Below the pieces are notes generated by a model. The model worked only from the letters and a program-made list of their open reading frames with translations, searched no databases and was not told where the DNA came from. Position numbers and translations under genes: made by a program. DNA of 64,000 nt from Octopus sinensis (lineage: Eukaryota): NCBI RefSeq assembly GCF_006345805.1, contig NC_042999.1:131688001-131752000 (forward strand), given 5' to 3'. This document shows, in pieces, positions 15,314 to 44,688 of the stretch (the stretch's first letter is position 1; the number at the start of each line of letters is the position of its first letter).

Positions 15314-15331
15314 TTGATGATGATGATGATG

Positions 15332-18300
15332 ATTCTTTCTTTATTGGCCACCAGGGCTGAACACAAAACATAGAGAACGATATACAGACGAGAGATAGTG
15401 AGGTTAAACGTGTAAGCAGCCAACAAACACAACTAATAACAAAGCGATTAAATCAACAATATGATTCCCCAACAGTAGGGAGTTCCACCGTAAAGAGACC
15501 TCACGCATTTTCGACCCATTAACACCGACGGCTCTTCAGGAAGCACCCTCTCTTCCCCCTTCCATCCGGCCTACAGGCACACACTTAGAGTAGGCACATT
15601 CACGCAGGCCATTCTTACCACATTCACCCACCTTTCAACGAACTTACTGGGTACAGTACCTCCCTCCTCAGTCTCACTTTCCTTTTCAGGTGGGACCTGA
15701 AAAAGTTAATGAGGCCTTGACCAAAGAGAAAGGTACCCGTCTTCAACCCTTTCAATCACGTCCACCACACACCCTCTTTTGTCATAACCACGAGACAGAG
15801 AAAATTGCCTTCCCTTCTCGGCCAAAGAAAGGAAGTGGGGCGATCTTCAAAATGGACTCGAACGATAGCTGGATCCGTCCTACATGTAACAATAACTGTT
15901 CAACAAATCTCCACAACTCAGCAATGTGCGGACACTGTACGAGAGCAAGCCGAATGGTTTCATCGCTCCGCGTGCATCTCGGACAAGCCCGACTGACTGC
16001 ACACCCGTGCCTGTAGAGCTTATCTCGAACCGGCAGCGGCCCCCGGTAGCACTGGAAGTTATCCATAGTTCCCAGCTCGAAAGTCCTGCGGAAGAGACCA
16101 GCGAATTGATTCCCCTCAATGCCCTGGATCTCTCCGAGTATGTCGTCGCTCTTATCCTCCGTGTATGTCATCGCTCAAGCCCCTACAGAATTTCAAGGTG
16201 GAACTTCTACCGACCGCATTGTCCGACTGGCCGAGGGCTGTGAGCGCGTGGAGACACCCTAGGTGCCAAGCGCCCTGCATCGGTCTACGCCTGATCCAGG
16301 ACTGTAGCTCCATCAAGGAGACGAGTTGCGGAATGCGCGTTCAACAAACGGCCACCACACCTGCTCACTGCTCACCGTTAAAGTATTGCTGGAGATGTCG
16401 GAGCCTCAGTGCATGTCTGCGCATCCTCAGCCACGGCATGCCCAGTCCTCCACGCAACGGGTGATAACAGCAAGTGAACCATCTGACAAGCGGTACCTGT
16501 CCCTTCCTCCGGAAGTAGAAGAGCAAATGCACCAGCTCGTTCAGCCACGAAGCGGGGCAAGGGACGACAGTCAGGCGATAGTATATGACGGATGCGATGT
16601 ACGCATTCGCCACCTCCGCCCGACATTTCAGAGGCAGATTCCTCTCGGCCAATTTCTGGGTGAGACTGACCACCCTGTCTGTCACCTCGCCCCAGTTCTT
16701 GTCCACTTGGAGATCCAGACCGAACCAGACCCCGAGCAACTTAACAAGTCTTTCTGTCCAGCGTCCCACCACGCTGTCGGTTGGCATGGACCTGCCTCTC
16801 CAGGGGCCGAACTACAGTCCCATTGACTTCTCCTGGTTGATAATTGCTCCTGTCACCGCTTCATGTTCCCTTAGGATAGTGCCGACCATCTCGATTTCCT
16901 AGGTGTCCGACACTATCACGGTGACTTCGTCCACATACGCTGACACGAACCTTTCATATCCGGGTTCACGCGGGATGCCCCTCGAAGCCTCCAGCTTCCG
17001 CAGTAATGGCTCGAGTGCCAGTACGTAGAGAAGGGGTGAGAGTGGGCATCCTTGACGGACCGAAGGTGCGATACTAAACGATTCCATGAGGTGGCCATTT
17101 ACTTTGACCTCCGAACAGATGTCATTGTACATTGCTGCGATCCAGGTTTTGAGAACGGGACCGAAATAAGCCGTCTTGATGACAACCTCCAAGTACAGAT
17201 GGTCGGCCCTATCAAACGCTTTCGATTGATCCAGATGGATCAGGGCTCCATCCTTAGCAAGTTCTTTACCAGCCCTCTCTACGATGTATCGCGTTAGGTA
17301 GAGGTTGTCGTGTATAGTTCTGCTGGGGTAGCGCAAGTCTCAGCATCACCCACCAGTCTGTCAACGATAACCGCCAACTTCTTTGCTAACACCTTGGCCA
17401 AAAAGTTGTAAATTGTACTGAGCAGAGTTATCGGCCTAAAGTTGTCAACAATTCTCCCCTTGTTCGGATCCTTTCTCAGTAGCGTCACAACACATCTCGG
17501 CTCACAGATCCGGGTATTCTCCCATTCTGCTGCCAGTTGCAGTAGACGTCTACTAAAAGCTCACCAAACAAGTCTGGCATCCATATGCCAGACTTGTTTG
17601 GCATATAAAACTCGAAAGGCAGAGCATCCTATCTCGGAGACCTCTCCCTCGTGCAACTAGCCAGCGTGTCAGGTATATCTTAAGCTGTTATCGGCATTTC
17701 GCAGAACTCCACGTCCCTGGCCGAAAGCTGCGGCATACCATCAAAGTAGGAAGTGAAGTTCACCTTCGCATCCGGGTCACTGCACGCCCTGTATAGTTCA
17801 GCAAAGTGCTGCTGAAATTCCGCACATATCTGCTTTGATTCGTGTAGCATGCGCCCGTCCCGACCCCCGAAAGACCAAATTGTAGTTTTGTTACCACGTT
17901 GCGTCTCGGCCACCCGGCCCATTGAACTGCTTTCGTTCCCTTCTGCCTTAGAGCACGCGCCCAAGCTCTGACAATGCAACCTTTAAGAATTGGTTCAGAA
18001 CCAATCTCACTGCCAGCACGTCGGTCGCTATGCTTCTACTGAGTGTCTCTTCTAATTTCTTAACTAGGTTTCCCTCTACTCTAGTCTTCTCTATCGCTTG
18101 TTCTCTTCTAAATTCTACAGCTTCTAATCTAATCGCCCGTTTTAGGCCCCTCCCCTACCATCGGTTCTTGACGACTGCACCCGTCAACTTTCGATGGAGT
18201 AACTTGCTAAGCCGGTCTCTGAAAGCTTGACGCGCCGGGAAGGACGCGTTCAGTTTCCAGTATCCGAGTCCTTGCCTATGGAGCCTATCTAGGTCAACCG

Positions 18301-19990
18301 TACAGATCACAAATTTGTGGACTGTGTAGTTGACGAATTCAAATTGTGGACACCCTATGCTATTCCTATCTGCTGGCTTGCGCACCCCACTTTCCTATCT
18401 GCTAGCCTCACCCGATTCACACGTGTATCCAAAATGGCGTTCCAATCGCCCACTAACTAAAGAGCGAGACGTCCCTAGAAAGGCCTCCAGGCGTCTGAAG
18501 AACTCCGGCTGCCCCACTCCAGTCGGTGCGTACACTGTGACCAGTCTAAAAGCACTACCTTCGTTATCGTTCACGTCCAGGACCATCGACTTAGCTTCAG
18601 GGTCCAGGAAAACCGAACGTATCTCGAGATCCAATCCTTTCCTGAACCACACTGCCACCCCAGCCACATGCCCGGTCGACAAAGAGATACAAAAATCTCA
18701 AAGTCATTGAATATGGGAGCTAAGGCCCGTGTGTCCGCGATCTTGGTCTCACTGACGGCTATTACATCCAGACTTAGCCACTTGAAGTCGTAGCACAAGT
18801 ATCCTTGCTTCCTCAACGACCCCAGGTCACGTACATTTATACAACCTACTTTAAGAACCGCCATGCTGGCCAGGAAGTAAGGAAAGGAAAAAGGGAGTGT
18901 CACTTACCTCCTGGAGCTGTTTGTGGTCGAGTGGTTCTCGTACACTGTCTGATTTGTTGGGGGTTCCTCTGGGAACCCCCTTAAAAGCCATCTGCTGGCC
19001 GTTATACTGGGAGATATACTGCTCTGGCTTCACGTAGAAAAACCTCAAAGGTAGTCCCGACCCAAATCTCCTTCCTCGATCTTTTAACCTCCAGGAAATT
19101 CTTCCCGTCGTCCATACAAATACAGGCGACAATTCACCATAAATCCAAGCATAGTGGGACTCTAGGTACCGCCCTTCTTCCCATGTACGTTACGAAGAGG
19201 GCGATTTCCTCGGTGCGATACGTGGTCACCGAGTTCTGTATCGCCTGCTCCTCGGTCTTAAAAAGGACCTCTACTCCGCCGTACAGCCTCGTTCTCGCAA
19301 TGTGGTGAATATCCTGCCATATGTCTTTTCAAGGCTTTTTCCACCTGGTCGCGTTTAGCATTTTCGAGTTTTCTTATCTTTGTGCTCACGCACCTGTTGA
19401 CAACTGTCCGTTTGGCTGTTGCTTCAAGCACGTCGCTTGGAAGTGTCAATTCTGCCCTCCTTCCATTCATTTTCATATGTTTTGCTGCCTTGTTTAGTTT
19501 TTCTAGTTTGTTCTCCAGTGAGATGTTAACCTATTCCTTAGCTGTCGTGATATTTGCAAAGGTTTCTTTCCCACCGCTAACTCCATTTTTGTTAGATTCT
19601 TCAACGCAATTGCTTTCAAAATTGTTTTGCGTGCTACTACGATTTCTATGTAGTGAGGAAGACCTTCTTCTTCTTCTTCTTCTTGCTGTCTACTGCCAAT
19701 CATGGTGGGGATGACGGGGAAGCCGTATCACCTTCGTTCCTCACTCCCGCTTTTCGTCACCATCTTCAATGTTTACTTTATTCGAAGCAAAGTTTCAAAA
19801 AAATTTGAATACAAAAAGGTTTGTATCACCCCCAAGGTGGGGGCAATAATAAAACAAAATGTCAGCCTCCAGAAGGGCAACTGGCTTGCAAAACGATTTA
19901 ATCAACAAAATACAGTATAGAACCTTTTAAAACAAATGAATTAAACATAAACTTACAGCGCTCCAAAAACACACCTCCAGCTACGGCGAC
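15332..19990 (-). mobile_element. L1/Tx1-clade LINE, degraded, near full length (copy 1)
   Basis: ORF2 fragments: APE (VGCINVR, SETK, VYAP, GYWKLN), RT (FRPITLL, DQSKAFDR, VRQGCPLSPLL), C-terminal CPRC..C; ORF2 ATG at 18864; ORF1 remnant from 19763; tail TTCAGCCCTGGTGGCCAATAAAGAAAG. Confidence 0.9.
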
Positions 19991-20073: not shown

Positions 20074-20571
20074 TCCTTTCTACAGGGCCTGAAATTTAGG
20101 TTGGCCAATTACATCAACTCCTGTACTCCTGTAAGCTTTGCGCGCCGGCGAAGACCCATTCAGTTTCCAGTGATCAAGTCTTTGCTTAAGTTAGATAACG
20201 GCAATGAACAGGCATGAAGCTATTTGTTCATGCTTTTAGTTCAGATACCGTCGGGTCATCTTTGCTTTCATTCTTCTGGAATCGACTGGACCCTTTTGCC
20301 AAAATTTCAGGCCGTGTGCCTATAATAGAAAGAATTATTAATCAGGCGGCGAGCTGGCAGAACCGTTAGCACGCCGGGCGAAATGCGTAGCCGTATTTCG
20401 TCTGTCGCACATGTGTTCGTGAAGTAAGAATTGCTGTTTCGTGGTGTTAATATTGTTAACAACTGTTGTTTCTTGTTAAACTGTTGAATAACTTAACTGT
20501 TGGAGTTTTCAATTGAAAACACTTAGTGCTTGTGGTAGCACGCGTTGTTCATTCCCCCTTTGGGGGGAAGA

Positions 20572-21852
20572 ATGTCGTCTAGCATGGAGCCTACCGTTGG
20601 AGCAGAAATACTTGTTTCTCCTGTTGAGAGGAGGAAATACATGTCCGGCGAGGAGCCAACTACAGACAAGGAAATAGGGGTTTCCCCCGCTACAAGAAGG
20701 AATAGCAGAGAGGATAATATATTTGATATTTTTGGAGATGTGTCTGAGAGCTCGTCAGAACTTTCACCAGAAGAGTTTCCGACTTTGCCAGAGAACAAAG
20801 GCATTGTGTCGAAGAGAATAATTGATGTGCCTAGCATCCAGATAGAACCAAAAAATGGAAAAAAAAGTTTTGCGTTGGCTGCTGGGGGTGGAACCCAGAT
20901 ACTGTCGACGAATAAAAGCGAAATTATGAAATACAGCAAAATGATGGAAATAAATGACAACAGTGTGAAAATTGAACCTCCGCAAAAGTTATTACAGGAA
21001 GAAAAGCAAAAAACAATAATTTTCAAAACATATTGTCTACAAAATAGAAAAATTGAAAGAATGTCAGAAGAGAAAATAGAAAAGTGCTTAAAGCCAATAT
21101 TGGGCGACGTAGTATTTCTGAGAAGAGGAAAAAAATTCGGAACGGTGGAAGTAAGGTTCACCAATAAAGAAATAGCACACAAGAACTCAGTGGAAACGTT
21201 GAAAACGAACGACGTGGAGTTAATACCCTATTATATGGGGATGAGGACGTCGCGAATAAAAATTACAAGGGTCCCGCCAGAGGTCGAACCTATGTGGTTG
21301 TTGGCGGCAGTCCTAATCAAAGAGGTAGAAAAAATTACTCTCCTCCAGGCTACCGCTACGGAAAACCCACGCTGGGATGGTCAAACAATTAATCTTCTCA
21401 TTCAAGCGGACCCTAAAATAATTCAAACAATTCCTGAGACAATTGAGGTAGGGGAGGAGAACCTCGTGGTGTTTGTTGAGGGCCGAAAACCTCGATGTTT
21501 TTTATGTGGTCAATTAGGCCACATTCGAAGGAACTGCAAGGAAAATGAAGAAGAGGAGGAAGAGGAGAAAAAAGACAAAGAGGAAGAAGATAAAGAAGAA
21601 ACAGATGAGAAAAAAACAACAAACAAAAGAAAAATACAACCAGCAACCCAGCCGAGAGCGGCGACTACTACAGAACAACGACCAAAAAAGACTGCCAGAA
21701 GAGAAAAAGAAGAAAAAGGCATAATAGCCGTATACACTAAAGATACTGAGCTCATGAGAGACATTCAACTCATAAAGACTGTAAAAAAAATTGATAACCT
21801 TTCAGAGGAATTTATCAATTACGACATATATGAAGTCTCAAATAAGACATAG
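20572..21852 (+). CDS. Tx1-like ORF1 protein (gag-like CCHC zinc knuckle); C-terminus probably frameshifted
   Basis: CFLCGQLGHIRRNC knuckle and acidic tract; the frame 21791-22099 carries RLDFNKS, which matches the ORF1 end of copy 3. Confidence 0.85.
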   Translation: MSSSMEPTVGAEILVSPVERRKYMSGEEPTTDKEIGVSPATRRNSREDNIFDIFGDVSESSSELSPEEFPTLPENKGIVSKRIIDVPSIQIEPKNGKKSFALAAGGGTQILSTNKSEIMKYSKMMEINDNSVKIEPPQKLLQEEKQKTIIFKTYCLQNRKIERMSEEKIEKCLKPILGDVVFLRRGKKFGTVEVRFTNKEIAHKNSVETLKTNDVELIPYYMGMRTSRIKITRVPPEVEPMWLLAAVLIKEVEKITLLQATATENPRWDGQTINLLIQADPKIIQTIPETIEVGEENLVVFVEGRKPRCFLCGQLGHIRRNCKENEEEEEEEKKDKEEEDKEETDEKKTTNKRKIQPATQPRAATTTEQRPKKTARREKEEKGIIAVYTKDTELMRDIQLIKTVKKIDNLSEEFINYDIYEVSNKT

Positions 21853-22110
21853 AATTCTACAAAATAAGTACAGAAAGACTGTATCTTCATTGAGATTAGA
21901 TTTTAACAAGTCGATATTTCATGGATTACCAGCTCCGATCCCGCGAGAAAAGGAAAAGGTGGAGATTCCCCCTCCACCTGATAATTCTGTGTCGGTGGTG
22001 AGACGGGATTTTGACAAATCTATTTCCCAAGACCGTCCACCTCCGACCCTGGATAAAAAAAAGGTGGAGGGTCCCCCTCCACCGGACAATCCTAATTAAA
22101 CAGGTAAGTG

Positions 22111-25100
22111 ATGGCTATTCACATTGGTTGTTTAAATGTTCATGGCCTGTTGTCAAGCTGGAAGCAAGGACGCTTTCTGAATGACATCAGGTCGAGAAAT
22201 TTGGATGTAATTGTTGCAACGGAAACCCGGGTGAAGGGGCCAAGAGATCTGCTCCCCCTCCTGAACGGCTACGAGAAATACGTTTCTCCGAGTCGGGCGG
22301 GAGGTGGGGGTGGGGTGTTGGTCCTACTAAAAAGAAACCGGGTAGCCGAGAAAAAGTTGGTTTTTTCTGACCCAGAAGGCAGGCTGGTCGTTCTCGACTT
22401 GACATTCAGTTGTGGCAAGACAATCAGGCTGGTCGCTATTTATGCACCAAACATTATTGGCCCGCAAACTGAATATTTTCGTGGCCTAGGAAAGTTCCTA
22501 GCCACGTCGCATTCACTAGTAGTGTTAGGAGACTCTAATACAATATGTGCAGCACACACAGATTGTGTTGGCTCAAACTCGAACATGAACAGAAAATGTA
22601 ACACAGGCTTTCGGGATCTGCTAAGTCAATTTCAGCTAGCAGATCCATATAGGTTGGAGCACCCGAACACTCCACAGTGGACGTGGTCAAATAGTGACGG
22701 GTCTACCAGAACATATCTAGATAGGATTTTAATTAGAGAAAAAGATAAGTCCATAGTTGAGTGTCCACAGTTTTTTCTAGTCAGCTACAGTGACCACAAG
22801 ATGGTTACCTGTAAACTGACGGTAGATAAGTTGCATAGACAGGGATCTGGCTACTGGAAACTCAATACGTCCCTTTTGGCGATTGAGGAGTACAGAAAGC
22901 GGATCAAGATGTTAATACAGAGGGCATTAACAGGTACCATCATTAATAACAAATGGTGGTACGCCCTAAAAAGAGCCATCAAATATGAGTCTATTAGGTT
23001 TAGCATAAGTTTAGCTAAGAAGGGACGTAAAATAGGAGATGGTCTAGTTAAGGAACTAGAAGAAGCCTGGAGGACTGGTAATACAGACCAAGCGAGGGTG
23101 AAAAGACTGGAGTTAAACCAGCATCTTGAAGCCCACCACATGGGAAGTATTACCAGAGCTAAGTTACGTGCAATGGGAAGTGAAGGAATCAAAGCCGCTG
23201 GATGGGCCCGAGTGGTGGAAGCTCGGCAAGGAAATAGTTCCTCTATTCGGTCTTTGACGAATCAAAATGGTGTCTTGATAAACGAACCCGAGAAAATGTG
23301 TGAGGTCTTTCGGGAGTACTTCGCCCAGCTGTTCGGGGGTGACGGCGGTCCTGGTGGTGGGAGAGCCCTCGAGGACTTTCTTACCGGGCTGCCGTGCCTC
23401 TCGGGGTCGGATGCGGAGTCTTGCGAAGGGCCAATCACACTTGAGGAGGTGATGGAGGCTTTGGCCGATTGTAAAGCGGGTAAGTCACCGGGACTTGATG
23501 GTCTTCCGTACGAGCTGTATAAATGTATGCCAGACTTGTTCGGGCAACTACTGACTGACGTGTACGCGAACTGGAAACAGAATGGGTTTATCCCCAGATC
23601 TGTGCGCCGGGGAGTAGTGACGTTGGTCAGAAAGGACCCGGACAAGGGGGACGTTCTAGAGAATTTCAGGCCCATCACTCTGTTAAACGCAGAAGTGAAG
23701 ATTTTGGCCAAGGTTCTAGCAAAAAGGTTGGCGCGTGTCGCGAATGGTATAGTCGGGGAGGCACAGACATGTGCCATCCCAGGCAGAACCATTCAGGATA
23801 CCCTCCATCTTATTCGCTATACCATAGAGAGGTTTGGTAATAAATCTGGCAAAGGTGGGGCATTGGTGCATTTGGACCAGTCTAAAGCTTTTGATAGGGT
23901 TGACCATCGATACCTAGCGACTGTACTTGCGCGGTTTGGCCTGGGCCTTGGCTTCCTCAGGTGGTTTATCGCTTTGTACCACAACATTGACTCGATAGCT
24001 CGGGTGAACGGTTTCCTTTCGAAGCCGTTCTGCATCAGACGCTCGGTTCGTCAAGGATGTCCGCTTTCACCACTTTTGTATGTGATGGCTCTCGAGCCAT
24101 TACTGCAAAGGTTGAGTGGCATCCCGAGAGAACCAGGACTAGAGGAGTTTGTTACGGCTTTCGCGGATGATATCACTATCAGTGTAACCACAGTGGCACG
24201 CCTACGTGAAGTAGGTAAGACTATTGAGGCTTACGAGGAGGTAGCAGGAGCAAAGATTAACCGGGAAAAGTCGGTCGGCTTGCAGCTCGGCACCTGGGTT
24301 GGCAAGTCGATGCCTTCAGACAGTGTTGTTAGGCGCTGGACGGAGGGACCGGTTAAGTTGCTGGGAGTCTGGTTTGGACCAGGCCTCCAGATAGAGAAGA
24401 ACTGGACGGAGGTATTGAGCAGGGTGACTGCAGTAGTCAAGACCTGGTCTTGGCGGTGGCTATCCCTGAAAGGGAGGGCGGAAGTGGCCAATGTGTTTAT
24501 CGCATCGGTCATTACCTACCGCCTGACTGTCGTGCCCTGTCCGGATTCGTGGTTGATCAGGTTGGAGAGACAGCTCTTTCGCTTTTTGTGGAAGGGCAGG
24601 TCGCCACTTGTGAAACGCTCTGTCTGCTGTCAAAAGCCTTTAAATGGAGGTTTAGGGATGCCTTGGTTAATGATGCGCAGACATGCGTTGAGGTTGAGGC
24701 ACCTCTGGATTCTCCTGGATAGTGAACGGGTGTGGTCTCCGCTGGCCAGACAAATGTTCCCTGAGTTCAAGAGTTTTTGCGAACAGGAAGCCTGGTGTTC
24801 TCGTAGACCGAGGTCGAGTGAGTGGCATAAAGAGTGCCGTAAGGCCCTCTTGCTGTTCCGGCGCTCGGGCAACGCCAGCGGTGGGGGTTCCACACGGATT
24901 TTATATAGTGGGTTGGTAGAGTCTGAATGCGACGATGGCCTGGGGTCGACTCTAGGTCTCGGATTTATTCAACTGGACAGCTTGTTTCATCGTACATTCG
25001 GGTTGAGAACGTTGGACAACTTCCAAAAGTCCTTAACCTGGCAATGCTACAGAGGTGCCTTGCCCGTTTGGGATAAGCTCGCAAGACATGGTAAACGTCA

Positions 25101-25512
25101 GTCGCCGACCTGTCCAAGATGCGGGGGGGACAGGGAAACCGTCCCTCACGCTATTGTTCAGTGTCCGGAGATAACTGAAATGTGGGCTTATGCTGAACAT
25201 CTGTTGTCCGGCGAAGGAAGAGTACGGCTGTCGACTGAGTCAATTATAAAAATTGACCCACCGGGAGTTCTAACGAACGATGGTAAGAATTGTTTTCTCA
25301 CAGTTGTAGCAATAGCAAAAGAGGCTGTATGGAATACTAGGATAAAAGGAATTAAGACAGGCAACTTTATCTCTGGTGACAATTTACGATCCTTTTTTTC
25401 TTTTCATTTGAAAAGGAAACTGTGGCTGGAGAAGAGGTGTCTGTCAGAGTGTACGTTCCAAAAGAGATGGAAGTATGTTGCACGAGTGTTGTGCGTGCAA
25501 GGAACCGTGTGA
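22111..25512 (+). CDS. Tx1/L1 ORF2: APE endonuclease + reverse transcriptase + C-terminal zinc knuckle, intact (1133 aa)
   Basis: APE motifs CLNVHG, TETR, IYAP, GDSN, YLDRI, SDHK; RT motifs KSPGLDG, FRPITLLN, DQSKAFDRV, RQGCPLSP, FADD; CPRC..H....C; no stops. Confidence 0.97.
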   Translation: MAIHIGCLNVHGLLSSWKQGRFLNDIRSRNLDVIVATETRVKGPRDLLPLLNGYEKYVSPSRAGGGGGVLVLLKRNRVAEKKLVFSDPEGRLVVLDLTFSCGKTIRLVAIYAPNIIGPQTEYFRGLGKFLATSHSLVVLGDSNTICAAHTDCVGSNSNMNRKCNTGFRDLLSQFQLADPYRLEHPNTPQWTWSNSDGSTRTYLDRILIREKDKSIVECPQFFLVSYSDHKMVTCKLTVDKLHRQGSGYWKLNTSLLAIEEYRKRIKMLIQRALTGTIINNKWWYALKRAIKYESIRFSISLAKKGRKIGDGLVKELEEAWRTGNTDQARVKRLELNQHLEAHHMGSITRAKLRAMGSEGIKAAGWARVVEARQGNSSSIRSLTNQNGVLINEPEKMCEVFREYFAQLFGGDGGPGGGRALEDFLTGLPCLSGSDAESCEGPITLEEVMEALADCKAGKSPGLDGLPYELYKCMPDLFGQLLTDVYANWKQNGFIPRSVRRGVVTLVRKDPDKGDVLENFRPITLLNAEVKILAKVLAKRLARVANGIVGEAQTCAIPGRTIQDTLHLIRYTIERFGNKSGKGGALVHLDQSKAFDRVDHRYLATVLARFGLGLGFLRWFIALYHNIDSIARVNGFLSKPFCIRRSVRQGCPLSPLLYVMALEPLLQRLSGIPREPGLEEFVTAFADDITISVTTVARLREVGKTIEAYEEVAGAKINREKSVGLQLGTWVGKSMPSDSVVRRWTEGPVKLLGVWFGPGLQIEKNWTEVLSRVTAVVKTWSWRWLSLKGRAEVANVFIASVITYRLTVVPCPDSWLIRLERQLFRFLWKGRSPLVKRSVCCQKPLNGGLGMPWLMMRRHALRLRHLWILLDSERVWSPLARQMFPEFKSFCEQEAWCSRRPRSSEWHKECRKALLLFRRSGNASGGGSTRILYSGLVESECDDGLGSTLGLGFIQLDSLFHRTFGLRTLDNFQKSLTWQCYRGALPVWDKLARHGKRQSPTCPRCGGDRETVPHAIVQCPEITEMWAYAEHLLSGEGRVRLSTESIIKIDPPGVLTNDGKNCFLTVVAIAKEAVWNTRIKGIKTGNFISGDNLRSFFSFHLKRKLWLEKRCLSECTFQKRWKYVARVLCVQGTV

Positions 25513-25756
25513 ATAGACGAGGAAAAAAAAAAGGAAAAATAAAAAGGTATCAGCGGTAGATCGGGGCTTGTGGGATCGGAGCGTAACTTGATCATCGCTT
25601 CATTTGTATTGTTTTTGTACTGTGTATTGCATTCGATTTTTATGTATTGTATTTTATTTTTGATGTCACATTTATGTAAAATCATATCGATTCACTGATC
25701 CCATCAGTTGTACTGTCCATATCTATGTTTGGCCCCCGGTGGGCAATAAAGAAATT

Positions 25757-26115
25757 CGTATTTCGTCTGCCATTACGTTCTGAGTTCAAATTCCGCCGAG
25801 GTCGACTTTGCTTTTCATCCTTTCGGGGTCGATAAATTAAGTACCACATGAGCACTGGGGTCGATATAATCGACTTAATCCGTTTGTCTGTCTTTGTTTG
25901 TCCTCTCTGTGTTTAGCCCCTGTGGGTAGTAAAGAAATAGGTATTTCGTCCGTCTTTACCTTCTAAGTTCAAATTCTACCGAGGTCGGCTTTGCCTTTTA
26001 TCCTTTCGGGGTCGGTAAAATAAGTACCAGTTGAGTACTAGGGTCGATGTAATCGACTGTCCCCCCCCTCCTCCAAAATTTCAAACCTTGTGCCTATAGT
26101 AGAAGGGATTATTAT
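25757..26115 (+). mobile_element. family M SINE body with Tx1-type tail followed by a headless second body
   Basis: Tail ..TTTAGCCCCTGTGGGTAGTAAAGAAATA ends at 25939, then GGTATTTCG (25940-25948) and a body with the ordinary tail + (ATT)n. Confidence 0.85.
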
Positions 26116-29100
26116 TATTATTATTGGCTTATATTCACCTACCATTTCAAGACCCCTCAAAACTAGAGAATTCTGTAATAAACTGACAATGTTCAGTGAT
26201 GAAACATATTTAAAAATAACCCAAGTAAATGAACTTATTCCATCGTCTCTGAAACTATTCGCATCATTTTTCTGAGACCGGTTCTCGATGACTAACATTA
26301 TTAATAATTGTTTCCTAATTCGTTTTTGAATAATTCATCACATGAACAACACAACTAGCTGTTAGTAATATATTACTAACAGTTTGTAATTAACAATTTT
26401 ATATATAGTTGATATTTATTACTAACAAGACGGTCTGATTAACATGGGGCCATGATTTAATAACATGATTTAATTAGTAGATGTCATGGTGTAGTGCGAA
26501 GTTCCTGGCGAAACGCCAACACATGTCTGATACTTGGCTCATGTACAGGATGATCCAAAAGTCCCTTTATCATTAATGTAACCCAGCTAACAACTGAGGT
26601 CGGTCGAGGTCTCTATACCTCTTTCACAGCTCACACCTCCTCACCACAGCCTTCATCTACTTTCCCTGCATTCATTAAACCCCGGACCCCACTTTTCCTG
26701 TTGAATGCTACGGCTTGGGAATTCTGGGATAGCTGTTTACACTGCCAGCCAGCTTGACCACCGCTGAATGTTGAGCTAGGTGTGCCCAGAAAATTGAATA
26801 GTATCACTGTTATTATATAGCGCCATTTTGGGGACAATGACTATTTCCTCATATTTTAATAATGACATTTTTCTAAAACTTATGGTTTCAAACTTCGGCA
26901 ATTTCAGGGGACGAGTCGATTTGATCAACATCAATGCTCAATTAGTACATATTTTACTGGCCCCGAAAGGATGAAAAGCAAAGTTAACCTCGGCTGAATT
27001 TGAATTCAGAACTCAGCCATTTAAACAGCTCTTAGGAAACAATGCACTCATAACTCAGTGAGTGCATTGTTTTGTATAGCAGAAACAGCTGTAAGCTAAT
27101 AAAAGTGATTACGTAACTCATTCTTTCGTCATTCATTCATAGATAGACACACATCCCGTTCTCTTCATGTTTCTCGCTCTGAATATTGGATTTTTCACTC
27201 AGAAGTTACAGTTACTACATCATTTCGGATATAACTATTTTAAGCTACATTCATTTTTTTCTTCTAGTCGATACTCGTAAATTGATAATTTTCATTTATC
27301 TATTACTTATCTTGCATTGAAGCAATTAATTAGCATCTGACAAACATGTTTACTATAATTGGTTCAGCAGAGCAACCAAGTTATGCAAAGATTTGCAATA
27401 AAATCACAATGGTCTTTTTTGATATTTGATTACAATCAATATAAACCCGACCAGGCGGCATCTCCGTGATTTTCCACCTCTCAGTCATTCTAATCCGACA
27501 AACACCGACTCACTTTATTTTAAAATTTTGTGTGTGGTTAAGAAGCTCGCTTTGCAATCATTTGGCTTCGAGTTCAGTCCCACTATGCTGTACCATGAGC
27601 AAGTGTCTTCTGCTATGGCCCCGGGTCGACCAAAGCTTTCTTAGTCAGCCACAGTGGAATTTGAACTCATAACGCGAAGACGGACGAGATGCCGCTAAGC
27701 ATTCTGCCCGGTATGCTAACGTTTCTGCCAGGTCGCTGCCTTATCCTTTTTATACATATTGCAGTTTATGTTTCTCTACTACAAATTAATGCTTTGTGCG
27801 CATGATCACACAAACAGGTCCCTGCACTTAGATACGAATGATTTATATATTTGAACTTTAAGTATATTATCATACGATGTATATAGTTAATTAAATTCAC
27901 ATGAAGACTTGAATGATTAAACTAGTCACATTTTCTTATAGTTGTTCAAATATATAGTCCATATCGATACAATTGGCAGTGTATATCCATATCTCCTCAT
28001 CTCTCTTAGTTTGTCCATTCTACTGACATGTTCAAAGATAATTACTATCGAAGACACTTTCATTGTGCCTTTTATATTTCGTTGACAAACTAACAGAGCG
28101 CTTAGCCAAATACTGAGTATAAATGTACATTCTAAGTTAAACTGTCCATTAAAAAAACAAAAAAAAAAACAATGTGTGTGTGATGGACTCTCCAGTCGAA
28201 GAAGACGTATGAGCGTTCACTTTTGCCGAACGGCCTGAAGAAATAATTTGTAGTGTACGTGCTGCACATTAGCTCACTTTCTCCAACAAATCAACGTTTC
28301 CTGAACAGGTGCACTGTGTACCACACGTCAGGTGTCGAAATGGTAGCAGGGCAACGGGAATTGAAGTGTTTTGCTCAAAAACACAACACACTAACCGATC
28401 TAGGAATTGAAACGACGATCTCGCGATCGTGAATGCAACACCATAACCGTTAGGCCATATACACACATATATATGCATGTATGTAAGGAGGTGGGGTATA
28501 AATTGCTTATAATTTATGTGTATGTATGCGTTTATCATCGTGTGTGTATATATATATTTTATCATTCATTAAATGATAAAGAGGAGCAAGTAATCATTTA
28601 ATTTCTTTAAATACGCTTTACCACAAGTAATTAACAATAAAACTAAGCGCTCGTGGATTTTCCACGAGTAACCACTTTTAAACTTATAATTATGGGAGTT
28701 AGTCTGTCAATTCTATTGGCGTCTCAACTAACTCTCTGTTCCAAGGGCAGAGAATGAGATGCAGTGTTCATGCCTTTACAATAGGCATTAACAGCTAAAA
28801 AAGAAAAACAAAACTGGCTTCCTGCCCAATAAAAATTCCTTCTCACTTTAACTACATAAACGCTTTTCTTATTTTGTTTGTTTGCCTTTTTAAAAAAAAA
28901 ATTTTACAATTATTTTGAAGTTTATCACGTTTGCTAATAACTAAAGCCATAATTAAGTCTCTCTCTTGTTGACAAATGATACATTTCCTGATGTTATACA
29001 CTCGCAATTTTGCCCCTGATAAGAAAATAAATTTCTACATATTTATGAATCAAAGGAATGAAACAACTAGGTCAGAAAACAGTATTCATTTGTTTGAAAT

Positions 29101-30678: not shown

Positions 30679-30795
30679 TAATATATATATATATCAATAC
30701 GGAGCAAATAATTCACGAGAAAATAATTGACTATTATTATCTAGTGTAACAATTTAAAAATGATAATAACAGAATTAATAATATAGGCGATTAAG

Positions 30796-31019
30796 GCGGC
30801 GAGCTGGCAGAAATGTTAGCACACTGGGCGAAATGCTTAGCGGTCTGCCTCTACGTTCTGAGTTCAAATTCCACCGAGGTCGACTTTGCCTTTCTTCCTT
30901 TCGGGGTCGATAAATTAAGTACCAGTTACGTATTGTGGTCGATGTAATCGACTTAATCCTTTTGTCTGTCCTTGTTTGTTCCCTCTATGTTTAGCTCCTT
31001 GTGGGCAATAAAAAAAATA
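30796..31019 (+). mobile_element. family M SINE with Tx1-type tail
   Basis: Ends TTTAGCTCCTTGTGGGCAATAAAAAAAATA directly before LINE copy 3. Confidence 0.85.
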
Positions 31020-31025
31020 AACGTT

Positions 31026-34000
31026 TTGGTTAGTAATTGTTATTATTATTTATTGTTATTGTTGCATTTTGAATTTTTGTTATTGTTCTACGTTCTGTTT
31101 TAACAGACGTAGTGGACTGTTGTTCGCCTCCGTAAGGTGGGGAAAATAATTTTTGAAAAAAAATATTTTGGAAAATATTTATTTGTGTGAAAATGAATTC
31201 GGAGGACAATGCTTCTAACCCTGACCAAGCTAACCAAAGAGCAATTGTAAAACTAGACAAAATGAACGAAAATGTGAACGAAAGCCACATAAATGCAGTA
31301 AACGGAAAAAGGAACCAAGAAGGGAAAATAAATGCTGAAAACGATGAAATGAATAACGGAAAAGTAAACCCAACAGAAGACACCCAAAAGAAGATTAATT
31401 TTGCCACCGCAGTCGGCGTGAGAAAAGATAAATTGAACATAGAGCTAGATTCACTGCGGCAACACAGAGGTATATTCGAAAGGGAAGGTTTTGATGTTAA
31501 AGCCACCCCTCTTAACGAACTCATCGAAGAAACAAAGAGGAAAATAATAACATATAAGACAATGATAATAAAAAACAAGAAAATAACAAGGCATCCAAAG
31601 GACAATTCGAGAAGTGTCTACAACCCATCTGGCAAGACATCGAGTTCTTGACCAAAGGGAGAAGATACGCCACAGTAATGGTGTACTTCAAAAATGAGGA
31701 AAAGGCTATAAAACACTCGCTCCAACCGATAAAAACCAATGAAGTCATTTTATTACCAATTTATATGGGTAGGAGAACATCCAAAATAGTTATTGAGGAA
31801 ATCCCACCAGAAATAAATGCCATCTGGATTATCTCAGCCCTTCTGATGGGGCTTGAGGATAAAATCAAGATGATCGAAGCTTCCAGAATACAACAACAGA
31901 ATTGGCGGGGCCAAGGGCTATAGATCGTAATTCAAGCAGCCCCACCAGACATTAGAAGAATTTGCTGAGAACATTCACATCGCAGAAGAAACTACCTTGC
32001 GAGTAATGGCAGGAAACCCAGATGCTACGAATGTGGTGAAAAAGATCACATTCGGGTAAAATGCTTCACCCGCAAGGAGAAAGAAGAAGAAAAAAAGAAC
32101 AAAACCAAAATACCGACCAGCAGAACCCCGGCACTGATGGTGTTCAACAAACCGGGGAAAAAGACGGCTGGTCGGTAGTAAAACCCAAGAAAAAGGGAAA
32201 ATAATAACGACAACCAACCCAACCCTACAACAACCAAAAGAAAAACTCAGGACACTCAAAGAAAAATTACCCCCACCCCACCACTATTCCCCCAAAAGTC
32301 AACAATATCATATTCCTCCCCATCCTATTCCTCACTCGGCGATGAGTCCCCCCTTACCCTTCTAGTTCGGATTTCCCCTCTCTCCCAGACATCACCCCTC
32401 ACCCGCCAAGCCCATGCAATCTGTCCCCGATATCAAGTCCAAGAAAATCTAACGAATATAAGGAAATACTGACTGCAATAAACAATGATAACGAACAATT
32501 AAAAAAAAGGTTAAAGCAAATACCAACGGCGTCAATTTACAAACATCACCATAAAACTCCAGAAAATATTGCCATTTATAAAATAGATAAAATGAATTAT
32601 AGCATCTTAAAAAAAACTACCACCCAACTGACATGGGTCCTCCAAGACTTGACTTTAACAAGTCGATGTACGAGGACCTATGTCAGAATATTACCCCACG
32701 AATAAGTGAAAAAGAAAGTACCACTGACTAAGGTAAGTCCATGTCAAGCATTCACGTCGGGTGTATAAATGTGCGTGGCCTGACGTCTAGTTGGAAGCAA
32801 GGACGCCTCCTAAATGACGTCAGGTCACGGGATTTAGATGTTGCTACAGAAACCCGGTTGAAGGGGCCAAGAGATCTGCTATCTCTGTTTGAAGGTTACG
32901 AAAGTTTCATCTCTCCGTGCTATCCTCATAGCGGGAGTGGGGTGTTGGTCCTATTAAAAAGAAACGGCGTTTCTGGGAAAAGGTTGATTTTTGCAGATAC
33001 AGAAGGTAGGCTGGTCGTCATTGACTTGACGTTCAGCCGTTGTAAGACTATCAGACTGGTTGCAATTTATGTACCTCAAGATACGGGGCAAAGTGAGTAT
33101 TATCAGAACCTAGAGAAGTTTCATGGTACATCACATCCCTTAGTTGTGCTAGGAGACTATAACACAATCTGCAATGCACGCGTAGATTATGTTGGCTCAT
33201 GTGTTAATAGGAGAAGTAATGCTTGCTTCCAGGATCTACTAAGACTTTTTGAGCTGGTAGATCCATACAGACTGGAATTTCCGAAGGTTCCATTGTGGAC
33301 ATGGGCAAATAGCGATGGACCTTCCAGGTCTTATCTAGATAGAGTATTAATTAGAAAAGTAGGTAAGAAGATAGCTAGGTGTCCACAGTTTCACATGGTC
33401 AGCTACAGTAATCACAAGATGGTCATCTGTAAACTCGACATAGATAAGTTATATAGAGGTCCCGGCTACTGGAAACTTAACACGTCTCTTTTGGCGATTA
33501 AAGAGTACATAGACGAACCTGAGGAGATGTGTGAGGTCTTTTAGGACCACTTCGCCCAGCTTTTCGGGGGTGGGGAGGTGGGATGGAGTGTAGGAAGGAC
33601 GTAACGGACTTCCTCGCCGGGCTGCTGCGCCTCTCGAGGCAGGTTGCGAGGTGTAGTGAGGGGCCGATCACACCTGAGGAGGTAAGAGGCCATGGCGGAC
33701 TACGGCGCGAGTAAGGCGCCAGAGCTGGATGGTCTACCCTACGAGCTGTATAAGAGCATGCCGAACTTGTTCGGGCCCCTATTGGCGAGTGTCTACGCGA
33801 ACTGGCAACAGAATGGGCTCATCCCCAGATCTGTACGCCGGGGAGTGGTGACGCTCGTCAAAAAGGACCCGAAAAAGGGGTGTCATTGATAATTTTAGGC
33901 CCATCACTCTGCTCAACGCAGAGCTGAAGATTTTGACCAAAGCGTTATCGAAAAGATAGGCGTGTGTCGCGGATGGGATGGTCGAGGGGGGGGGCACAGA

Positions 34001-35843
34001 TATGTGCCATCCCCGGCAGATACATTCAGGATAATCACTATCTTATACGATACACTATAGAGGGAATTTATAACGATTCCGGCAAGGGAGGGGCAGTGGT
34101 CCATTTAGCTTTTGATAGGGTTGACCATCACTACCTGTGTCCGTTCTGGCCCAGTTCGACCTGGATCTTGGCTTCCTCAGGTGGATTATTCAAATGTATG
34201 ACAACATTGACTCGGTAGTTCGGGTGAACGGCTGTCTTTCTAAGTCGTTCCACGTCTAATGGTCGGTTCGTCAAGAATGTCTGCTCTCCTCGCCTTTGTA
34301 TGTGATGGCTCTTGAGCCATTGCTGCGAAAGCTGAGCGGCATTCCGAGACAGCCAGGTTGTGAGATGTCGGTTTCAGCCTACGCGGATGACATCACCATC
34401 ATCGTGACCAAAATGGCTCACCTACAGAGAGTAGGCAAGGCCATTGAGGAATACGAGACGGTAATTGAGGAGCAAAAGTTAATCGTGAAAAATAAGTCGG
34501 CTTGCAGCTCGGTACCTAGAGAGGCAAGTCGATACCTCCTGGCAGCGTCGTGGAACGTTGGACGGAGGGTTCGATTAAGTTGCTAGGGGTTTGGTTCGGA
34601 CCAGACCTCTAAAGAGAGAAGAATTGGGCCGAGGTATCGAGCAGGGTGACCCACATTGCCAAGACCTGGTCTTGGCGGTGGCTTTTCCTGAAAGGGAAGG
34701 CGGAGGTGGCCAATGTATTTATCGCATCGGTCATCACATACCGCCTAACCGTCGTGCCTTGTCCTGATTCATGGTTGATCAAGCTGGAAAGACAGCTCTT
34801 GCACTTCTTGTGGCAGGTCTTGCAAGACGCTCTGTTTGCTGTCAACAACTGTTAAAGGGTAGGCTAGGGATGCCTTGGCTATTGATGCGCTGAGGCTGAG
34901 GCACCCGTGGCTCTACGTGGATGGTGAACGAGTGTGGTCTTCGCTGGCGAAACAGATGTTTCCCAGGTTCACTAGTTTTGGTGGACCTGGTTCAATCGTA
35001 GATTGAAGTTGGGTACATGGTATACGGAGTGTCGCAAGGCACTCCTGCTTTTCCGTCGCTTGGGCAATGCCTGTGGTAGTGGCTCCACCGCTGTCTTTTA
35101 TAGAGGGTTTGTAGAGGCAGAATGCGATGATACATTGGGGGAAACCCTAGGTTTTGACGATAATCAGCTGGCCAGTCTGTTCCAACGTACATTCGGGCCG
35201 AAGACCCTGGATAATTTTCAGAAGTCTTTGGCATGGCAGTGTTACCGCGGAGCCTTACCTGTCCGGTGGCCGAGACACTCCGATCTGTCCAAGATGTGGG
35301 CGGGACAAAGAAACTGCCCCGCACGCTATTGTTCAGTGTCCGGATGTGTCTGACGTGTGGGTTTATGCCGAACAACTATAGTGAAAATTAACCCACCGGA
35401 TTTCTTAACGAAAGAAAGAAAGAATTGTTTTCTCTCTGCAGTATGGAGGACAAGAATGAAAGGAATAAGGTCAGGCACCTTCATCTCTGGCCCTAATCTG
35501 GTGAATTTTTTCATCTTCCACCTAAAAAGGCAAATAGGGCTGGAGAGATGTTTGACTGAAGATATGTTTGGAAAAAGATGGAAGAATGTCGCACGAATAT
35601 TGGGCATGAAAGGCTCCGCGTTAATGCGATATGGTTTTAAAACCCAGGTCAGTGGTAAGGCGGGGTTCGTGAGGTCCATTGTAAACCCACCTCCACGCCA
35701 TCTGTTGTGTCTTATTGTGTCCTATCATCATCCGTATTATATATAATGTATTTAGAATGGATCCCAATCGCATTTCATGTAAAATCATTCGATTTCATTG
35801 TGCAGTCCCTTCTATGTATGTCCTTATGGGTAATAAAAAAATT
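31026..35843 (+). mobile_element. L1/Tx1-clade LINE, degraded, near full length (copy 3)
   Basis: Broken ORF1 from 31193 with CYECGEKDHIRVKC knuckle; ORF2 ATG 32741 (HVGCINVRG, GYWKLN, FRPITLLN, AYADD) with stops, frameshifts and an internal deletion near 33510; tail TATGGGTAATAAAAAAATT. Confidence 0.92.
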
Positions 35844-35848
35844 AAGAG

Positions 35849-44654: not shown

Positions 44655-44688
<34 letters not shown>

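What the first reader, a model, noticed from the sequence alone, without database searches (positions are those of the whole stretch)
25715..25940. Tx1 LINEs and a SINE subfamily share the same 3' tail
Seen tails: LINE2 CTATGTTTGGCCCCCGGTGGGCAATAAAGAAATT; LINE1 TGTGTTCAGCCCTGGTGGCCAATAAAGAAAG; LINE3 CTATGTATGTCCTTATGGGTAATAAAAAAATT; SINE copies (5774, 15087, 25900, 30990) CT(C/A)TGTTTAGC(C/T)CC(T)TGTGGG(T/C)A(A/G)TAAAGAAATA. All can form a short GCC(C)-N5-GG(G)(C/T) stem-loop before the A-rich end. Other family M copies carry different tails. Established: shared tails mark stringent LINE-SINE partners, which is less typical for L1-clade elements. Inference: a tail-swapped SINE subfamily is mobilised by Tx1 and may have arisen from a truncated Tx1 insertion into a SINE.
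Basis: partly seen in the sequence, partly recalled or inferred. Interest (0 to 1): 0.75.

Follow-up and report, generated by a model that had tools for sequence, protein, structure and literature searches.

The report
SINE subfamily carrying an L1/Tx1-type LINE tail
A small subfamily of a very abundant short repeat (SINE) has picked up the last ~35-40 bases of a family of L1/Tx1-type LINEs in the same window. It also lands at the same kind of site as those LINEs, so it is probably copied by them, which makes this a real but fairly ordinary new example of LINE-SINE parasitism.

Summary
A profile built from the four SINE 'T' tails finds those four copies first. Its next three hits in 64 kb are exactly the 3' termini of the three L1/Tx1-like LINEs, in the same register (E 3e-7, 1e-4, 3e-4; next hit E 0.34). 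Only the last 34-40 nt are shared.

The 4-bp hairpin can form in all seven sequences. It has no thermodynamic support (z about 0) and no covariation support.

New evidence supports the partnership:
- LINE2 (intact ORFs) sits inside a T-tailed SINE with a 15-bp TSD that starts at SINE position 48 (TTAGC|CGTATTTCG).
- Two T-tailed SINE copies join a downstream SINE at that same nucleotide.
- The one T-tailed copy with a clean 19-bp TSD also starts |GGTAT.
- All three LINEs, and three of the four T-tailed SINEs, lie in or next to the 5' region of a same-orientation SINE.

One correction to the finding: in three of the four copies the T tail is internal. It is followed by a 5'-truncated SINE with the ordinary tail, and one such unit is enclosed by a single 16-bp TSD.

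The origin by a truncated LINE insertion is not shown. The Tx1-clade placement was not tested by phylogeny. No outside sequence could be obtained. Verdict: a new member of a known kind, of moderate interest.

The parts
20407..25756 (+). LINE2: full-length L1/Tx1-like LINE with both ORFs intact. ORF1 runs from the ATG at 20572 to 21852 and has a CCHC knuckle. ORF2 runs 22111-25512 and has APE endonuclease, RT and zf-RVT domains.
25721..25756 (+). LINE2 3' tail shared with the SINE subfamily (TCTATGTTTGGCCCCCGGTGGGCAATAAAGAAATT). It has no poly(A).
20392..20406 (+). Upstream copy of the LINE2 target-site duplication, CGTATTTCGTCTGTC (SINE positions 48-62).
25757..25771 (+). Downstream copy of the LINE2 target-site duplication, CGTATTTCGTCTGCC (14 of 15 identical to the upstream copy).
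20344..20406 (+). Head (positions 1-62) of T-tailed SINE copy B25, split off by the LINE2 insertion.
25757..25939 (+). Remainder of SINE copy B25 (position 48 to the end), including the T tail at 25876-25939.
25940..26118 (+). 5'-truncated SINE (position 48 to the end, ordinary A tail plus (ATT)5), joined directly to the T tail of B25 at GGTATTTCG.
15087..15315 (-). T-tailed SINE copy B15, full length (T tail at 15087-15151).
14920..15086 (-). 5'-truncated SINE (position 48 to the end, A tail), joined directly to the T tail of B15 at GGTATTTCG.
15335..19987 (-). LINE1: degraded L1/Tx1-like LINE. Its 3' tail is at 15335-15367. It lies 19 bp (an (ATC)n run) upstream of the head of B15, in the same orientation.
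5774..5930 (-). T-tailed SINE copy S5774, 5'-truncated at body position 79. The tail is terminal and ends in GAAATAGAAATA. It is flanked by an exact 19-bp TSD, GGTATATGCGTATCAAAAA (5755-5773 and 5930-5948).
30793..31019 (+). T-tailed SINE copy B30. Its tail (30954-31019) is the A-rich variant AATAAAAAAAATA. It carries a 7-nt deletion of TATTTCG at position 48.
31020..35843 (+). LINE3: degraded L1/Tx1-like LINE that directly abuts the B30 tail. Its 3' tail is at 35805-35843 (AATAAAAAAATT). The 5' boundary is approximate, within about 10 nt.
35844..36042 (+). 5'-truncated SINE (about position 17 to the end, A tail) that follows LINE3.
30777..30792 (+). Left copy of a 16-bp TSD, AATAATATAGGCGATT. 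The right copy, AATAATATAGGTGATT, is at 36043-36058. The pair encloses B30 + LINE3 + the truncated SINE.

Best explanation
The window holds one abundant SINE family of about 230 nt with a tRNA-like head. I think it is a CORE-type SINE of an octopod mollusc, but that is from memory and was not verified. Most copies end in one of two tails followed by (ATT)n.

A minor, fairly young subfamily ('B', 4 copies, 87-91% alike) instead carries a 65-nt tail. Its last 34-40 nt are homologous to the extreme 3' end of a family of L1/Tx1-type LINEs that have no poly(A) tail.

Proposed mechanism (inferred):
1. The LINE's ORF2 protein recognises this specific 3' sequence (TCTRTGTTTRGCCCC-NN-GTGGGYARTAAAGAAAT), rather than a poly(A) tail, to start target-primed reverse transcription.
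2. Pol III transcripts of the B subfamily that carry the same sequence borrow the protein.
3. The endonuclease of the LINE2-like lineage nicks preferentially at C|SGTAT. That site occurs in the 5' (tRNA-like) part of the resident SINE itself (TTAGC|GGTATTTCG, position 48).
4. LINEs and B copies therefore pile up inside sibling SINEs. This gives nested and composite units of the form B, T tail, then SINE position 48 to the end.

Shown here: the tail homology and its terminal position; the TSDs (15, 19 and 16 bp); the coincidence of junction positions; the clustering in the same orientation.

Inferred: recognition of the tail by ORF2p, endonuclease specificity, and how the composites formed. The two candidate routes are homology-assisted 5' joining of a B cDNA to the head of the target SINE, or read-through and re-mobilisation of the composite through its ordinary tail.
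For: Tail homology at the termini:
- nhmmer E 3.3e-7, 1.2e-4 and 3.5e-4 at the three LINE termini, next hit E 0.34.
- 0 of 2000 shuffles reach the observed Smith-Waterman scores.
- The tails lie inside the TSDs of LINE2 and of S5774, so they belong to the inserted elements and not to the target.

Nature and direction of transfer:
- Neither the LINEs nor the B copies have a poly(A) tail.
- The tail is present in three LINE lineages that differ by 21-67% in ORF2 protein, but in only 4 of about 30 SINE fragments. This points to transfer from LINE to SINE.

Shared target:
- LINE2's TSD starts at SINE position 48, and the joined halves of its host align continuously with the intact copy B15.
- The B15 and B25 tails join a downstream SINE at that same nucleotide.
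- The S5774 TSD starts GGTAT.
- In the window, 3 of 6 SINE copies with GGTAT/CGTAT at this site are occupied, against 0 of 9 with GGCAT/GACAT/AGCAT. The hypergeometric probability is 20/455 = 0.044, calculated by hand.

Clustering:
- All 3 LINE 3' junctions and 3 of 4 B 3' junctions lie between -19 and +48 nt of the 5' end of a same-orientation SINE.
- The random expectation is 0.018 per event, which gives 6e-6 for the LINEs and 2.4e-5 for the B copies.

Ordinary-tailed copies behave differently. They join head-to-tail through (ATT)n/(GTT)n or end in unique DNA.

LINE2 has intact ORFs, so a source of the proteins exists.
Against: - Only one B copy (S5774) ends at the T tail with a TSD. In the other three the tail is internal.
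- The 5' flanks of B15 and B25 are microsatellite, like those of ordinary copies, and not the expected head of a target SINE.
- One composite is enclosed by a single TSD. The composites could therefore have been moved as units by the machinery that serves the ordinary tail.
- If B15+A' and B25+A' are copies of one composite master, the position-48 coincidence rests on two events rather than three. The downstream parts are more diverged (84%) than the B parts (92%), but not significantly so (p = 0.10).
- The hairpin has no covariation or thermodynamic support.
- The sample is one 64-kb window, and no further genomic copies could be fetched.
Confidence: 0.6

Rival explanations
1. The T tail is a fossil inside composite (dimer-like) SINEs. 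A B-like unit once became fused to position 48 of another SINE. The composite has since been amplified by the unknown LINE that serves the ordinary (ATT)n tail. The L1/Tx1-like LINEs do not currently mobilise these SINEs.
For: - Three of the four copies are composites that end in the ordinary A tail.
- Their 5' flanks look like those of ordinary copies.
- A single 16-bp TSD encloses one composite.
- The divergence difference between the B parts and the downstream parts is not significant (p = 0.10).
Against: - S5774 ends at the T tail and has an exact 19-bp TSD directly after it.
- The fusion point equals LINE2's TSD-proven nick site.
- The third composite has a different fusion point (about position 17), so more than one fusion event is needed.
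- The downstream parts look like different SINE subtypes.
Confidence: 0.22
2. The resemblance is chance or low-complexity. Both ends merely contain a polyadenylation signal (AATAAA) and an A-rich terminus.
For: AATAAA and the A-rich run make up about 12 of the shared positions.
Against: - The non-A-rich part (TCTRTGTTTRGCCCC..GTGGG) is shared as well.
- The profile E-values are 3e-7 to 3.5e-4, and all three hits fall at LINE termini in the same register.
- 0 of 2000 shuffles reach the observed scores.
Confidence: 0.02
3. The similarity is a local product. Gene conversion or recombination between physically adjacent LINE and SINE copies in this cluster (14.9-36 kb) copied the LINE end onto neighbouring SINEs. 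There is no genome-wide subfamily.
For: - Three of the four T-tailed copies touch a LINE.
- The B30 tail shares two states only with the adjacent LINE3.
Against: - S5774 lies about 9.5 kb from the nearest LINE and has its own TSD.
- The four SINE tails are much closer to one another than to any LINE, including in the 25-30 nt that the LINEs lack.
Confidence: 0.06
4. The direction was the reverse. The LINE lineage captured its 3' end from the SINE, for example by 3' transduction.
For: LINEs here do sit next to SINEs, so read-through into a SINE is possible.
Against: - The tail is terminal in three LINE lineages with only 33-79% ORF2 identity. The SINE copies that carry it are 87-91% alike and are a minority of their family.
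- The LINEs lack the SINE-specific 5' half of the tail module.
Confidence: 0.04

Closest known systems
[quoted passage not shown] 2014, PMC4176376; review PMC3747384)
   Same: The SINE and the LINE share a specific, non-poly(A) 3'-terminal sequence of a few tens of nucleotides. A possible short stem-loop precedes an A-rich or short-repeat end. One copy here ends in a duplicated GAAATA.
   Different: The known pairs are mostly in the L2, CR1 and RTE clades, whereas this LINE is of L1/Tx1 type. The stem is only 4 bp and is unsupported statistically. No assay has been done.
Maize/sorghum L1-clade LINEs with a conserved 3' stem-loop shared with ZmSINE2/3 (Ohshima 2012, PMC3472496)
   Same: An L1-group LINE lineage with a conserved 3' end of about 45 nt that is shared with a SINE. 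This implies stringent recognition within the L1 group.
   Different: That case is in plants, not animals. The structure there was described as solid (about -12 to -18 kcal/mol, as given in the review PMC3747384), while here it is weak. No target preference was reported there.
Crocodilian SINEU mobilised by Tx1-Mar LINEs (Kojima 2015, PMC4494074)
   Same: A Tx1-clade LINE and a SINE share a target preference for particular positions inside another abundant repeat. Tandem and nested LINE and SINE insertions at the same site are common.
   Different: SINEU has snRNA-derived heads and poly(A) tails, and the partnership was inferred from target preference alone. Here a specific tail is shared, and the preferred target appears to be the SINE family itself.
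CORE-SINEs and other SINE superfamilies that exchange LINE-derived tails (MetaSINE paper PMC4824008; mollusc SINE 'jigsaw' PMC4758252)
   Same: One SINE body occurs with several alternative 3' modules. Template switching of the RT is the usual explanation proposed for this.
   Different: The partner LINEs identified there are of L2/CR1 type, or unknown. I did not test membership of this SINE in the CORE superfamily.
Bipartite chimeric retrocopies made by RT template switching (U6-L1 and similar; Buzdin 2002, as cited in PMC4494074)
   Same: A full-length small RNA copy that ends at its natural 3' end is fused to a 5'-truncated retroelement, and the pair is enclosed by one TSD. The B + truncated-SINE units resemble this.
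   Different: Two of the fusion points here coincide with the LINE's own nick site. Template switching alone does not predict that.

Membership tests
LINE-SINE partner pair with a shared 3' tail (stringent type) | Significant sequence similarity between the SINE and LINE 3' ends | tested here: met
LINE-SINE partner pair with a shared 3' tail (stringent type) | The similarity lies at the extreme 3' terminus of both elements, inside their TSDs, with no poly(A) | tested here: met
   LINE2 and S5774. The LINE1 and LINE3 termini were placed by alignment.
LINE-SINE partner pair with a shared 3' tail (stringent type) | SINE copies end at the shared tail and are flanked by TSDs | tested here: inconclusive
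   Met in 1 of 4 copies (S5774, 19-bp TSD). The tail is internal in the other 3.
LINE-SINE partner pair with a shared 3' tail (stringent type) | Same target-site pattern and TSD length for SINE and LINE | tested here: met
   The sample is small. TSDs are 15 bp (LINE2) and 19 bp (S5774). Four junctions read C|SGTAT, three of them at SINE position 48.
LINE-SINE partner pair with a shared 3' tail (stringent type) | Conserved 3' stem-loop required for recognition | tested here: inconclusive
   A 4-bp stem can form in 7 of 7 sequences, but there are no compensatory changes and z is about 0.
LINE-SINE partner pair with a shared 3' tail (stringent type) | Trans-mobilisation of the SINE by the LINE proteins | not testable with these tools
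   Needs a retrotransposition assay.
Tx1 clade of non-LTR retrotransposons (L1 group) | ORF2 with an N-terminal APE endonuclease, an RT and a C-terminal zinc-binding domain, plus an ORF1 with a CCHC knuckle | tested here: met
   Pfam hits PF03372, PF00078 and PF13966, with PF00098 in ORF1. The architecture is shared with non-mammalian L1, so it is not diagnostic for Tx1.
Tx1 clade of non-LTR retrotransposons (L1 group) | RT phylogeny places the element with Tx1 rather than with L1 proper | not tested
   Only indirect evidence. The best named homologue is 'Transposon TX1 149 kDa protein' (321 bits), against 217 bits for human L1 ORF2p and 75 bits or less for R2. No reference set was available.
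Tx1 clade of non-LTR retrotransposons (L1 group) | Target-sequence-specific insertion | tested here: inconclusive
   All 3 LINE copies lie in or next to SINE heads in the same orientation (p about 6e-6). However, they sit at three different positions (-19, about 17, and 48), and only one has a clear TSD.
tRNA-derived (CORE-type) SINE | A 5' head recognisable as a tRNA, or with Pol III A and B boxes | tested here: inconclusive
   ARAGORN and Rfam gave no tRNA call. By eye there is a B-box-like GTTCAAATTCC and an A-box-like TGGCAGAATCG about 55 nt apart.
tRNA-derived (CORE-type) SINE | The central CORE domain | not tested
   The resemblance of GGGGTCGATAAAATAAGTACC to the MIR/CORE motif is recalled from memory only.

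The most novel reading that the evidence does not exclude
A lineage of L1/Tx1-type LINEs homes into a defined site in the Pol III (tRNA-like) head of the genome's own most abundant SINE family. A SINE subfamily that captured the LINE's specific 3' tail inherits that homing. It therefore inserts into its sibling SINEs and builds dimeric or composite SINEs. This would be a stringent, tail-sharing and target-sharing Tx1-SINE pair in a mollusc, with different LINE sub-lineages (LINE2-like versus LINE3-like tails) serving different sites (position 48 versus about 17).
Probability: 0.35. Interest if true: 0.6.

Novelty: new member of a known kind. Interest (0 to 1): 0.45.

Why it matters
If confirmed genome-wide, three things follow.
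- It would be an animal example of specific (non-poly(A)) 3'-end recognition in the L1/Tx1 group. So far that is documented mainly for a plant L1 lineage.
- It would be a second case, after crocodilian SINEU/Tx1-Mar, of a SINE riding on target-selective Tx1-type LINEs. Here both a shared tail and a shared target would be visible together.
- It would help explain how the very SINE-rich genome this window seems to come from builds nested and dimeric SINE arrays.

It would also supply a natural tail/protein pair for studying RNA recognition by L1-like ORF2 proteins. It does not overturn any current view.

Tried and rejected
- More genomic copies. Exact-pattern scans gave 0 hits for the tail in metagenome and viral contigs, and for the SINE core in metagenome, bacterial/archaeal genome and viral contigs. 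The window's ORF2 is not in the protein/contig index.
- The closest homologue (58% identity, an NCBI assembly contig) is cut off before its 3' end and has no name.
- Two distant homologues (38% identity, from ocean and JGI metagenomes) have long unrelated 3' UTRs without the tail.
- A tRNA origin of the head was not confirmed by ARAGORN or Rfam.
- Hairpin support. Folding z-scores are about 0 and there is no covariation.
- Independence of the two position-48 composites. The downstream parts are 84% identical and the B parts 92%, but Fisher p = 0.10.
- A possible short TSD (A[A/G]ACGTT) for LINE3 cannot be separated from homology of LINE3's own 5' end with LINE2's. It is left open.
- No TSD was found for LINE1, which lies within (GTT)n/(ATC)n microsatellite.
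- A literature search for the SINE sequence itself found nothing. One search was wasted on a bad term.

Full report
WHAT THE WINDOW CONTAINS. The window is AT-rich eukaryotic DNA, 35-40% G+C outside the LINEs. It holds about 30 whole or partial copies of one SINE. The body is about 170 nt and begins AAGGCGGCGAGCTGGCAGAATCGTTAGCAC. It contains a B-box-like GTTCAAATTCC and the motif CTTTCGGGGTCGATAAAATAAGTACC.

After the body (...AATCGACT) come three alternative 3' modules:
- 'A': ...CAAAATTTCAGGCCTTGTGCCTATAGTAGAAAGGATT(ATT)n
- 'B-prime': ...GAAATTGCTGGCCTTGTGCCAAAATTTGAAACC(ATT)n
- 'T': in four copies only, the 65-nt module TAATCCGTTTGTCTGTCCTTGTTTGTCCCCTCTGTGTTTAGCCCCTTGTGGGTAGTAAAGAAATA

From memory the SINE looks like the CORE-type tRNA SINEs that dominate octopus genomes (compare PMC8967140). 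I could not verify the organism, and ARAGORN and Rfam did not call a tRNA.

THE LINEs. There are three related LINEs.
- LINE2 (20407-25756, +) is full length with both reading frames open. ORF1 (to 21852) has a CCHC knuckle. ORF2 (22111-25512) has APE endonuclease, RT and zf-RVT domains.
- LINE1 (15335 to about 19987, -) is a degraded relative, with 33-53% ORF2 identity to LINE2.
- LINE3 (about 31020-35843, +) is also degraded, with 49-79% ORF2 identity to LINE2.

ORF2 matches human L1 ORF2p across endonuclease and RT (E 2e-63), and R2 proteins far less well. The best named database relative is a coral protein labelled 'Transposon TX1 149 kDa protein'. 'L1-Tx1' families are reported as recently active in Octopus vulgaris (PMC13282606). 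The elements are therefore of L1/Tx1 type. The Tx1-clade label itself was not tested by phylogeny.

CHECK OF THE OBSERVATION. A profile made only from the four SINE T tails was run over both strands of the window.
- It found those four copies first. The next hits were the 3' termini of LINE2 (25721-25755, E 3.3e-7), LINE1 (15367-15334, E 1.2e-4) and LINE3 (35805-35842, E 3.5e-4).
- All three align to the last 35-40 model positions. The next hit has E 0.34.
- Local alignment scores of the SINE tail against each LINE's last 100 nt beat 2000 of 2000 shuffles.
- The shared block is TCT(A/G)TGTTT(A/G)GCCCC-NN-GTGGG(C/T)A(A/G)TAAAGAAAT.
- The first 25-30 nt of the SINE tail module are not significantly similar to these LINEs. 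They look like degenerate repeats of the TTTGTCCCC..TGTG motif.
- None of the elements has a poly(A) tail.

THE STEM-LOOP. A 4-bp stem (GCCC/GGGY) with a 4-5-nt loop can be drawn in all seven sequences. All cells pair, against 24-52% when the partner columns are slid. The only variation is one-sided, G-C to G-U and C-G to U-G. The folding energies are no better than those of shuffled sequences, with z between -1.35 and +1.16. The structure is possible but unproven.

ANATOMY OF THE COPIES. The picture here is richer than the finding describes.
1. LINE2 is inserted inside a T-tailed SINE (B25).
   - The SINE head is at 20344-20406 and its remainder at 25757-25939.
   - A 15-bp target-site duplication, CGTATTTCGTCTG(T/C)C, flanks the LINE.
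   - With the LINE and one TSD copy removed, the two halves align continuously with the intact copy B15.
   - LINE2's first-strand nick was therefore at SINE position 48, TTAGC|(C/G)GTATTTCG.
2. The T tails of B25 (ending at 25939) and B15 (ending at 15087, minus strand) are each followed, without any spacer, by a SINE that starts at that same nucleotide (GGTATTTCG...) and ends in the ordinary A tail.
3. S5774 is 5'-truncated, ends at the T tail (with a duplicated GAAATA), and is flanked by an exact 19-bp TSD, GGTATATGCGTATCAAAAA. Its target again starts GGTAT.
4. B30 (30793-31019) carries an A-rich tail variant. It is followed at once by LINE3, then by a SINE from about position 17 with an A tail. 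A single 16-bp TSD (15 of 16 identical; 30777-30792 and 36043-36058) encloses all three.
5. LINE1 ends 19 bp upstream of the head of B15, within inter-SINE microsatellite.

SHARED TARGET PREFERENCE. Four junctions read C|SGTAT, and three of them fall on one nucleotide of a SINE of about 230 nt.
- All three LINE 3' junctions lie between -19 and +48 nt of the 5' end of a SINE in the same orientation. So do three of the four T-tail 3' junctions.
- A random junction does so with probability 0.018. That gives about 6e-6 for the three LINEs and 2.4e-5 for the B copies.
- Among SINE copies in the window that keep this site, 3 of 6 with (G/C)GTAT are occupied and 0 of 9 with G(G/A)CAT are. The hypergeometric probability is 0.044, calculated by hand.
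- Copies with the ordinary tails behave differently. They end in unique DNA or join the very 5' end of the next SINE through (ATT)n/(GTT)n.

It is also the argument used for crocodilian SINEU and Tx1-Mar LINEs (Kojima 2015, PMC4494074). There, nested and tandem insertions at a shared site in another repeat are likewise common.

WHAT WEAKENS THE SIMPLE READING. In three of the four copies the T tail is internal.
- The 5' flanks of B15 and B25 are microsatellite, as for ordinary copies. They are not the head plus TSD of a target SINE.
- One composite has a single TSD pair.

Two explanations fit these facts.
(a) A B cDNA primed at position 48 (or about 17) of a resident SINE resolves its 5' end by annealing to the homologous head of that SINE. 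No second head or TSD then appears, and the outer flanks are those of the resident copy.
(b) A B copy inserted in a SINE is transcribed through into the downstream SINE, which has no T4 terminator. The composite is then re-mobilised by the partner of the ordinary tail.

Over the same SINE segment, the two downstream parts are 84% identical and the two B parts 92%. This leans towards independent events but is not significant (p = 0.10). Explanation (b) shades into the main rival: the T tail may be only a fossil inside composites. S5774, and the coincidence of the fusion point with LINE2's nick site, argue against that rival in its pure form.

DIRECTION AND ORIGIN. The tail is terminal in three LINE lineages that have diverged to 33-79% protein identity. 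The SINE copies that carry it are 87-91% alike and are a small minority of their family. The direction is therefore LINE to SINE. No copy shows the structure expected from a truncated LINE inserted in a SINE. The body/tail junction is near SINE position 175, not at the LINE's insertion positions. The donor of the 5' half of the tail module is not in the window. Template switching, the usual proposal (PMC4824008), is equally possible, and the question stays open.

A SIDE OBSERVATION. B30's tail shares two states only with the adjacent LINE3: a U-G pair in the stem, and AATAAAAAAA in place of AATAAAGAAA. Both sit at the position-17 site rather than at position 48. This hints that different LINE sub-lineages serve different sites, as in the crocodilian case. 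It is a single instance and could be chance (roughly p = 0.05 by my own estimate).

COMPARISON WITH WHAT IS KNOWN.
- Shared LINE/SINE tails are a long-established principle (reviewed in PMC3747384), mostly for the L2, CR1 and RTE clades.
- Stringent recognition within the L1 group has been described for a maize/sorghum lineage (PMC3472496).
- SINE mobilisation by target-selective Tx1 LINEs has been described for SINEU, which have poly(A) tails (PMC4494074).
- Tail exchange among mollusc SINEs is documented (PMC4758252, PMC4824008).
- I found no paper describing this pair. Curated repeat libraries could not be consulted.

I therefore class it as a new member of a known kind, with a moderately interesting twist: the preferred target seems to be the SINE family itself.

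LIMITS. Everything rests on one 64-kb window: 3 LINEs and 4 T-tailed copies. No related genomic sequence could be retrieved. The organism, the CORE and tRNA nature of the SINE, and the Tx1-clade placement are all unverified.

Noticed in passing
window 12560-12609 (+): An orphan SINE head (model positions 2-51) stops at ...GCTTAGTGG|TTAAGG, within 3 nt of the position-48 hot spot. Unrelated DNA follows and no matching 3' part is nearby.
   Followed up: partly
window 12691-12868 and 12872-13049: A 178-bp tandem duplication, 99.4% identical, sits just downstream of the orphan head.
   Followed up: no
window 30840-30850 (within B30): B30 lacks exactly the 7 nt TATTTCG at the position-48 site (GCTTAGCGG^TCTGCC). 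This could be a scar at the hot spot or a chance deletion.
   Followed up: no
window 20551-20566 (LINE2), about 31133-31148 (LINE3), 19826-19845 on the minus strand (LINE1): All three LINEs keep a C-run/G-run hairpin motif (for example CCCCCTTTGGGGGG) shortly before the ORF1 start, although the rest of the 5' UTR is barely alignable.
   Followed up: partly
window 30954-31019 versus 35805-35843: The B30 tail shares two states only with the adjacent LINE3: T in the 5' arm of the stem, and AATAAAAAAA instead of AATAAAGAAA. This may mean sub-lineage-specific partnership or local gene conversion.
   Followed up: partly
window 5774-5795 (-): The S5774 tail ends with a duplicated GAAATAGAAATA. This would fit RT slippage on a short terminal repeat, as in stringent-type LINEs.
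   Followed up: no
window 9001-9641 (-), 13173-13829 (-), 14689-15315 (-), 56724-58047 (-): SINE copies with the ordinary tails form head-to-tail arrays joined only by (ATT)n/(GTT)n. This suggests their unidentified LINE partner primes in these microsatellites. No LINE with the A or B-prime tail is in the window.
   Followed up: partly
window 43551-46706 (+): A fourth, unrelated LINE fragment: an ORF1-like match and an RT ORF with 24% identity to LINE2. It has none of the three SINE tails nearby.
   Followed up: no
window 14749-14912 (-), 13230-13381 (-): SINE copies with a divergent head (ACTGCGGTGAGCCGAAAAATAGGGTTAGAAC...) carry the same B-prime tail. These may be a second head type on a shared body and tail.
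   Followed up: no
window 25744-25749 and the equivalent position in all seven tails: The shared tail contains a canonical AATAAA only 5-8 nt before the end of the element. Pol II transcripts of the LINE would therefore be cleaved in flanking DNA, and reverse transcription would have to start internally at the tail.
   Followed up: no
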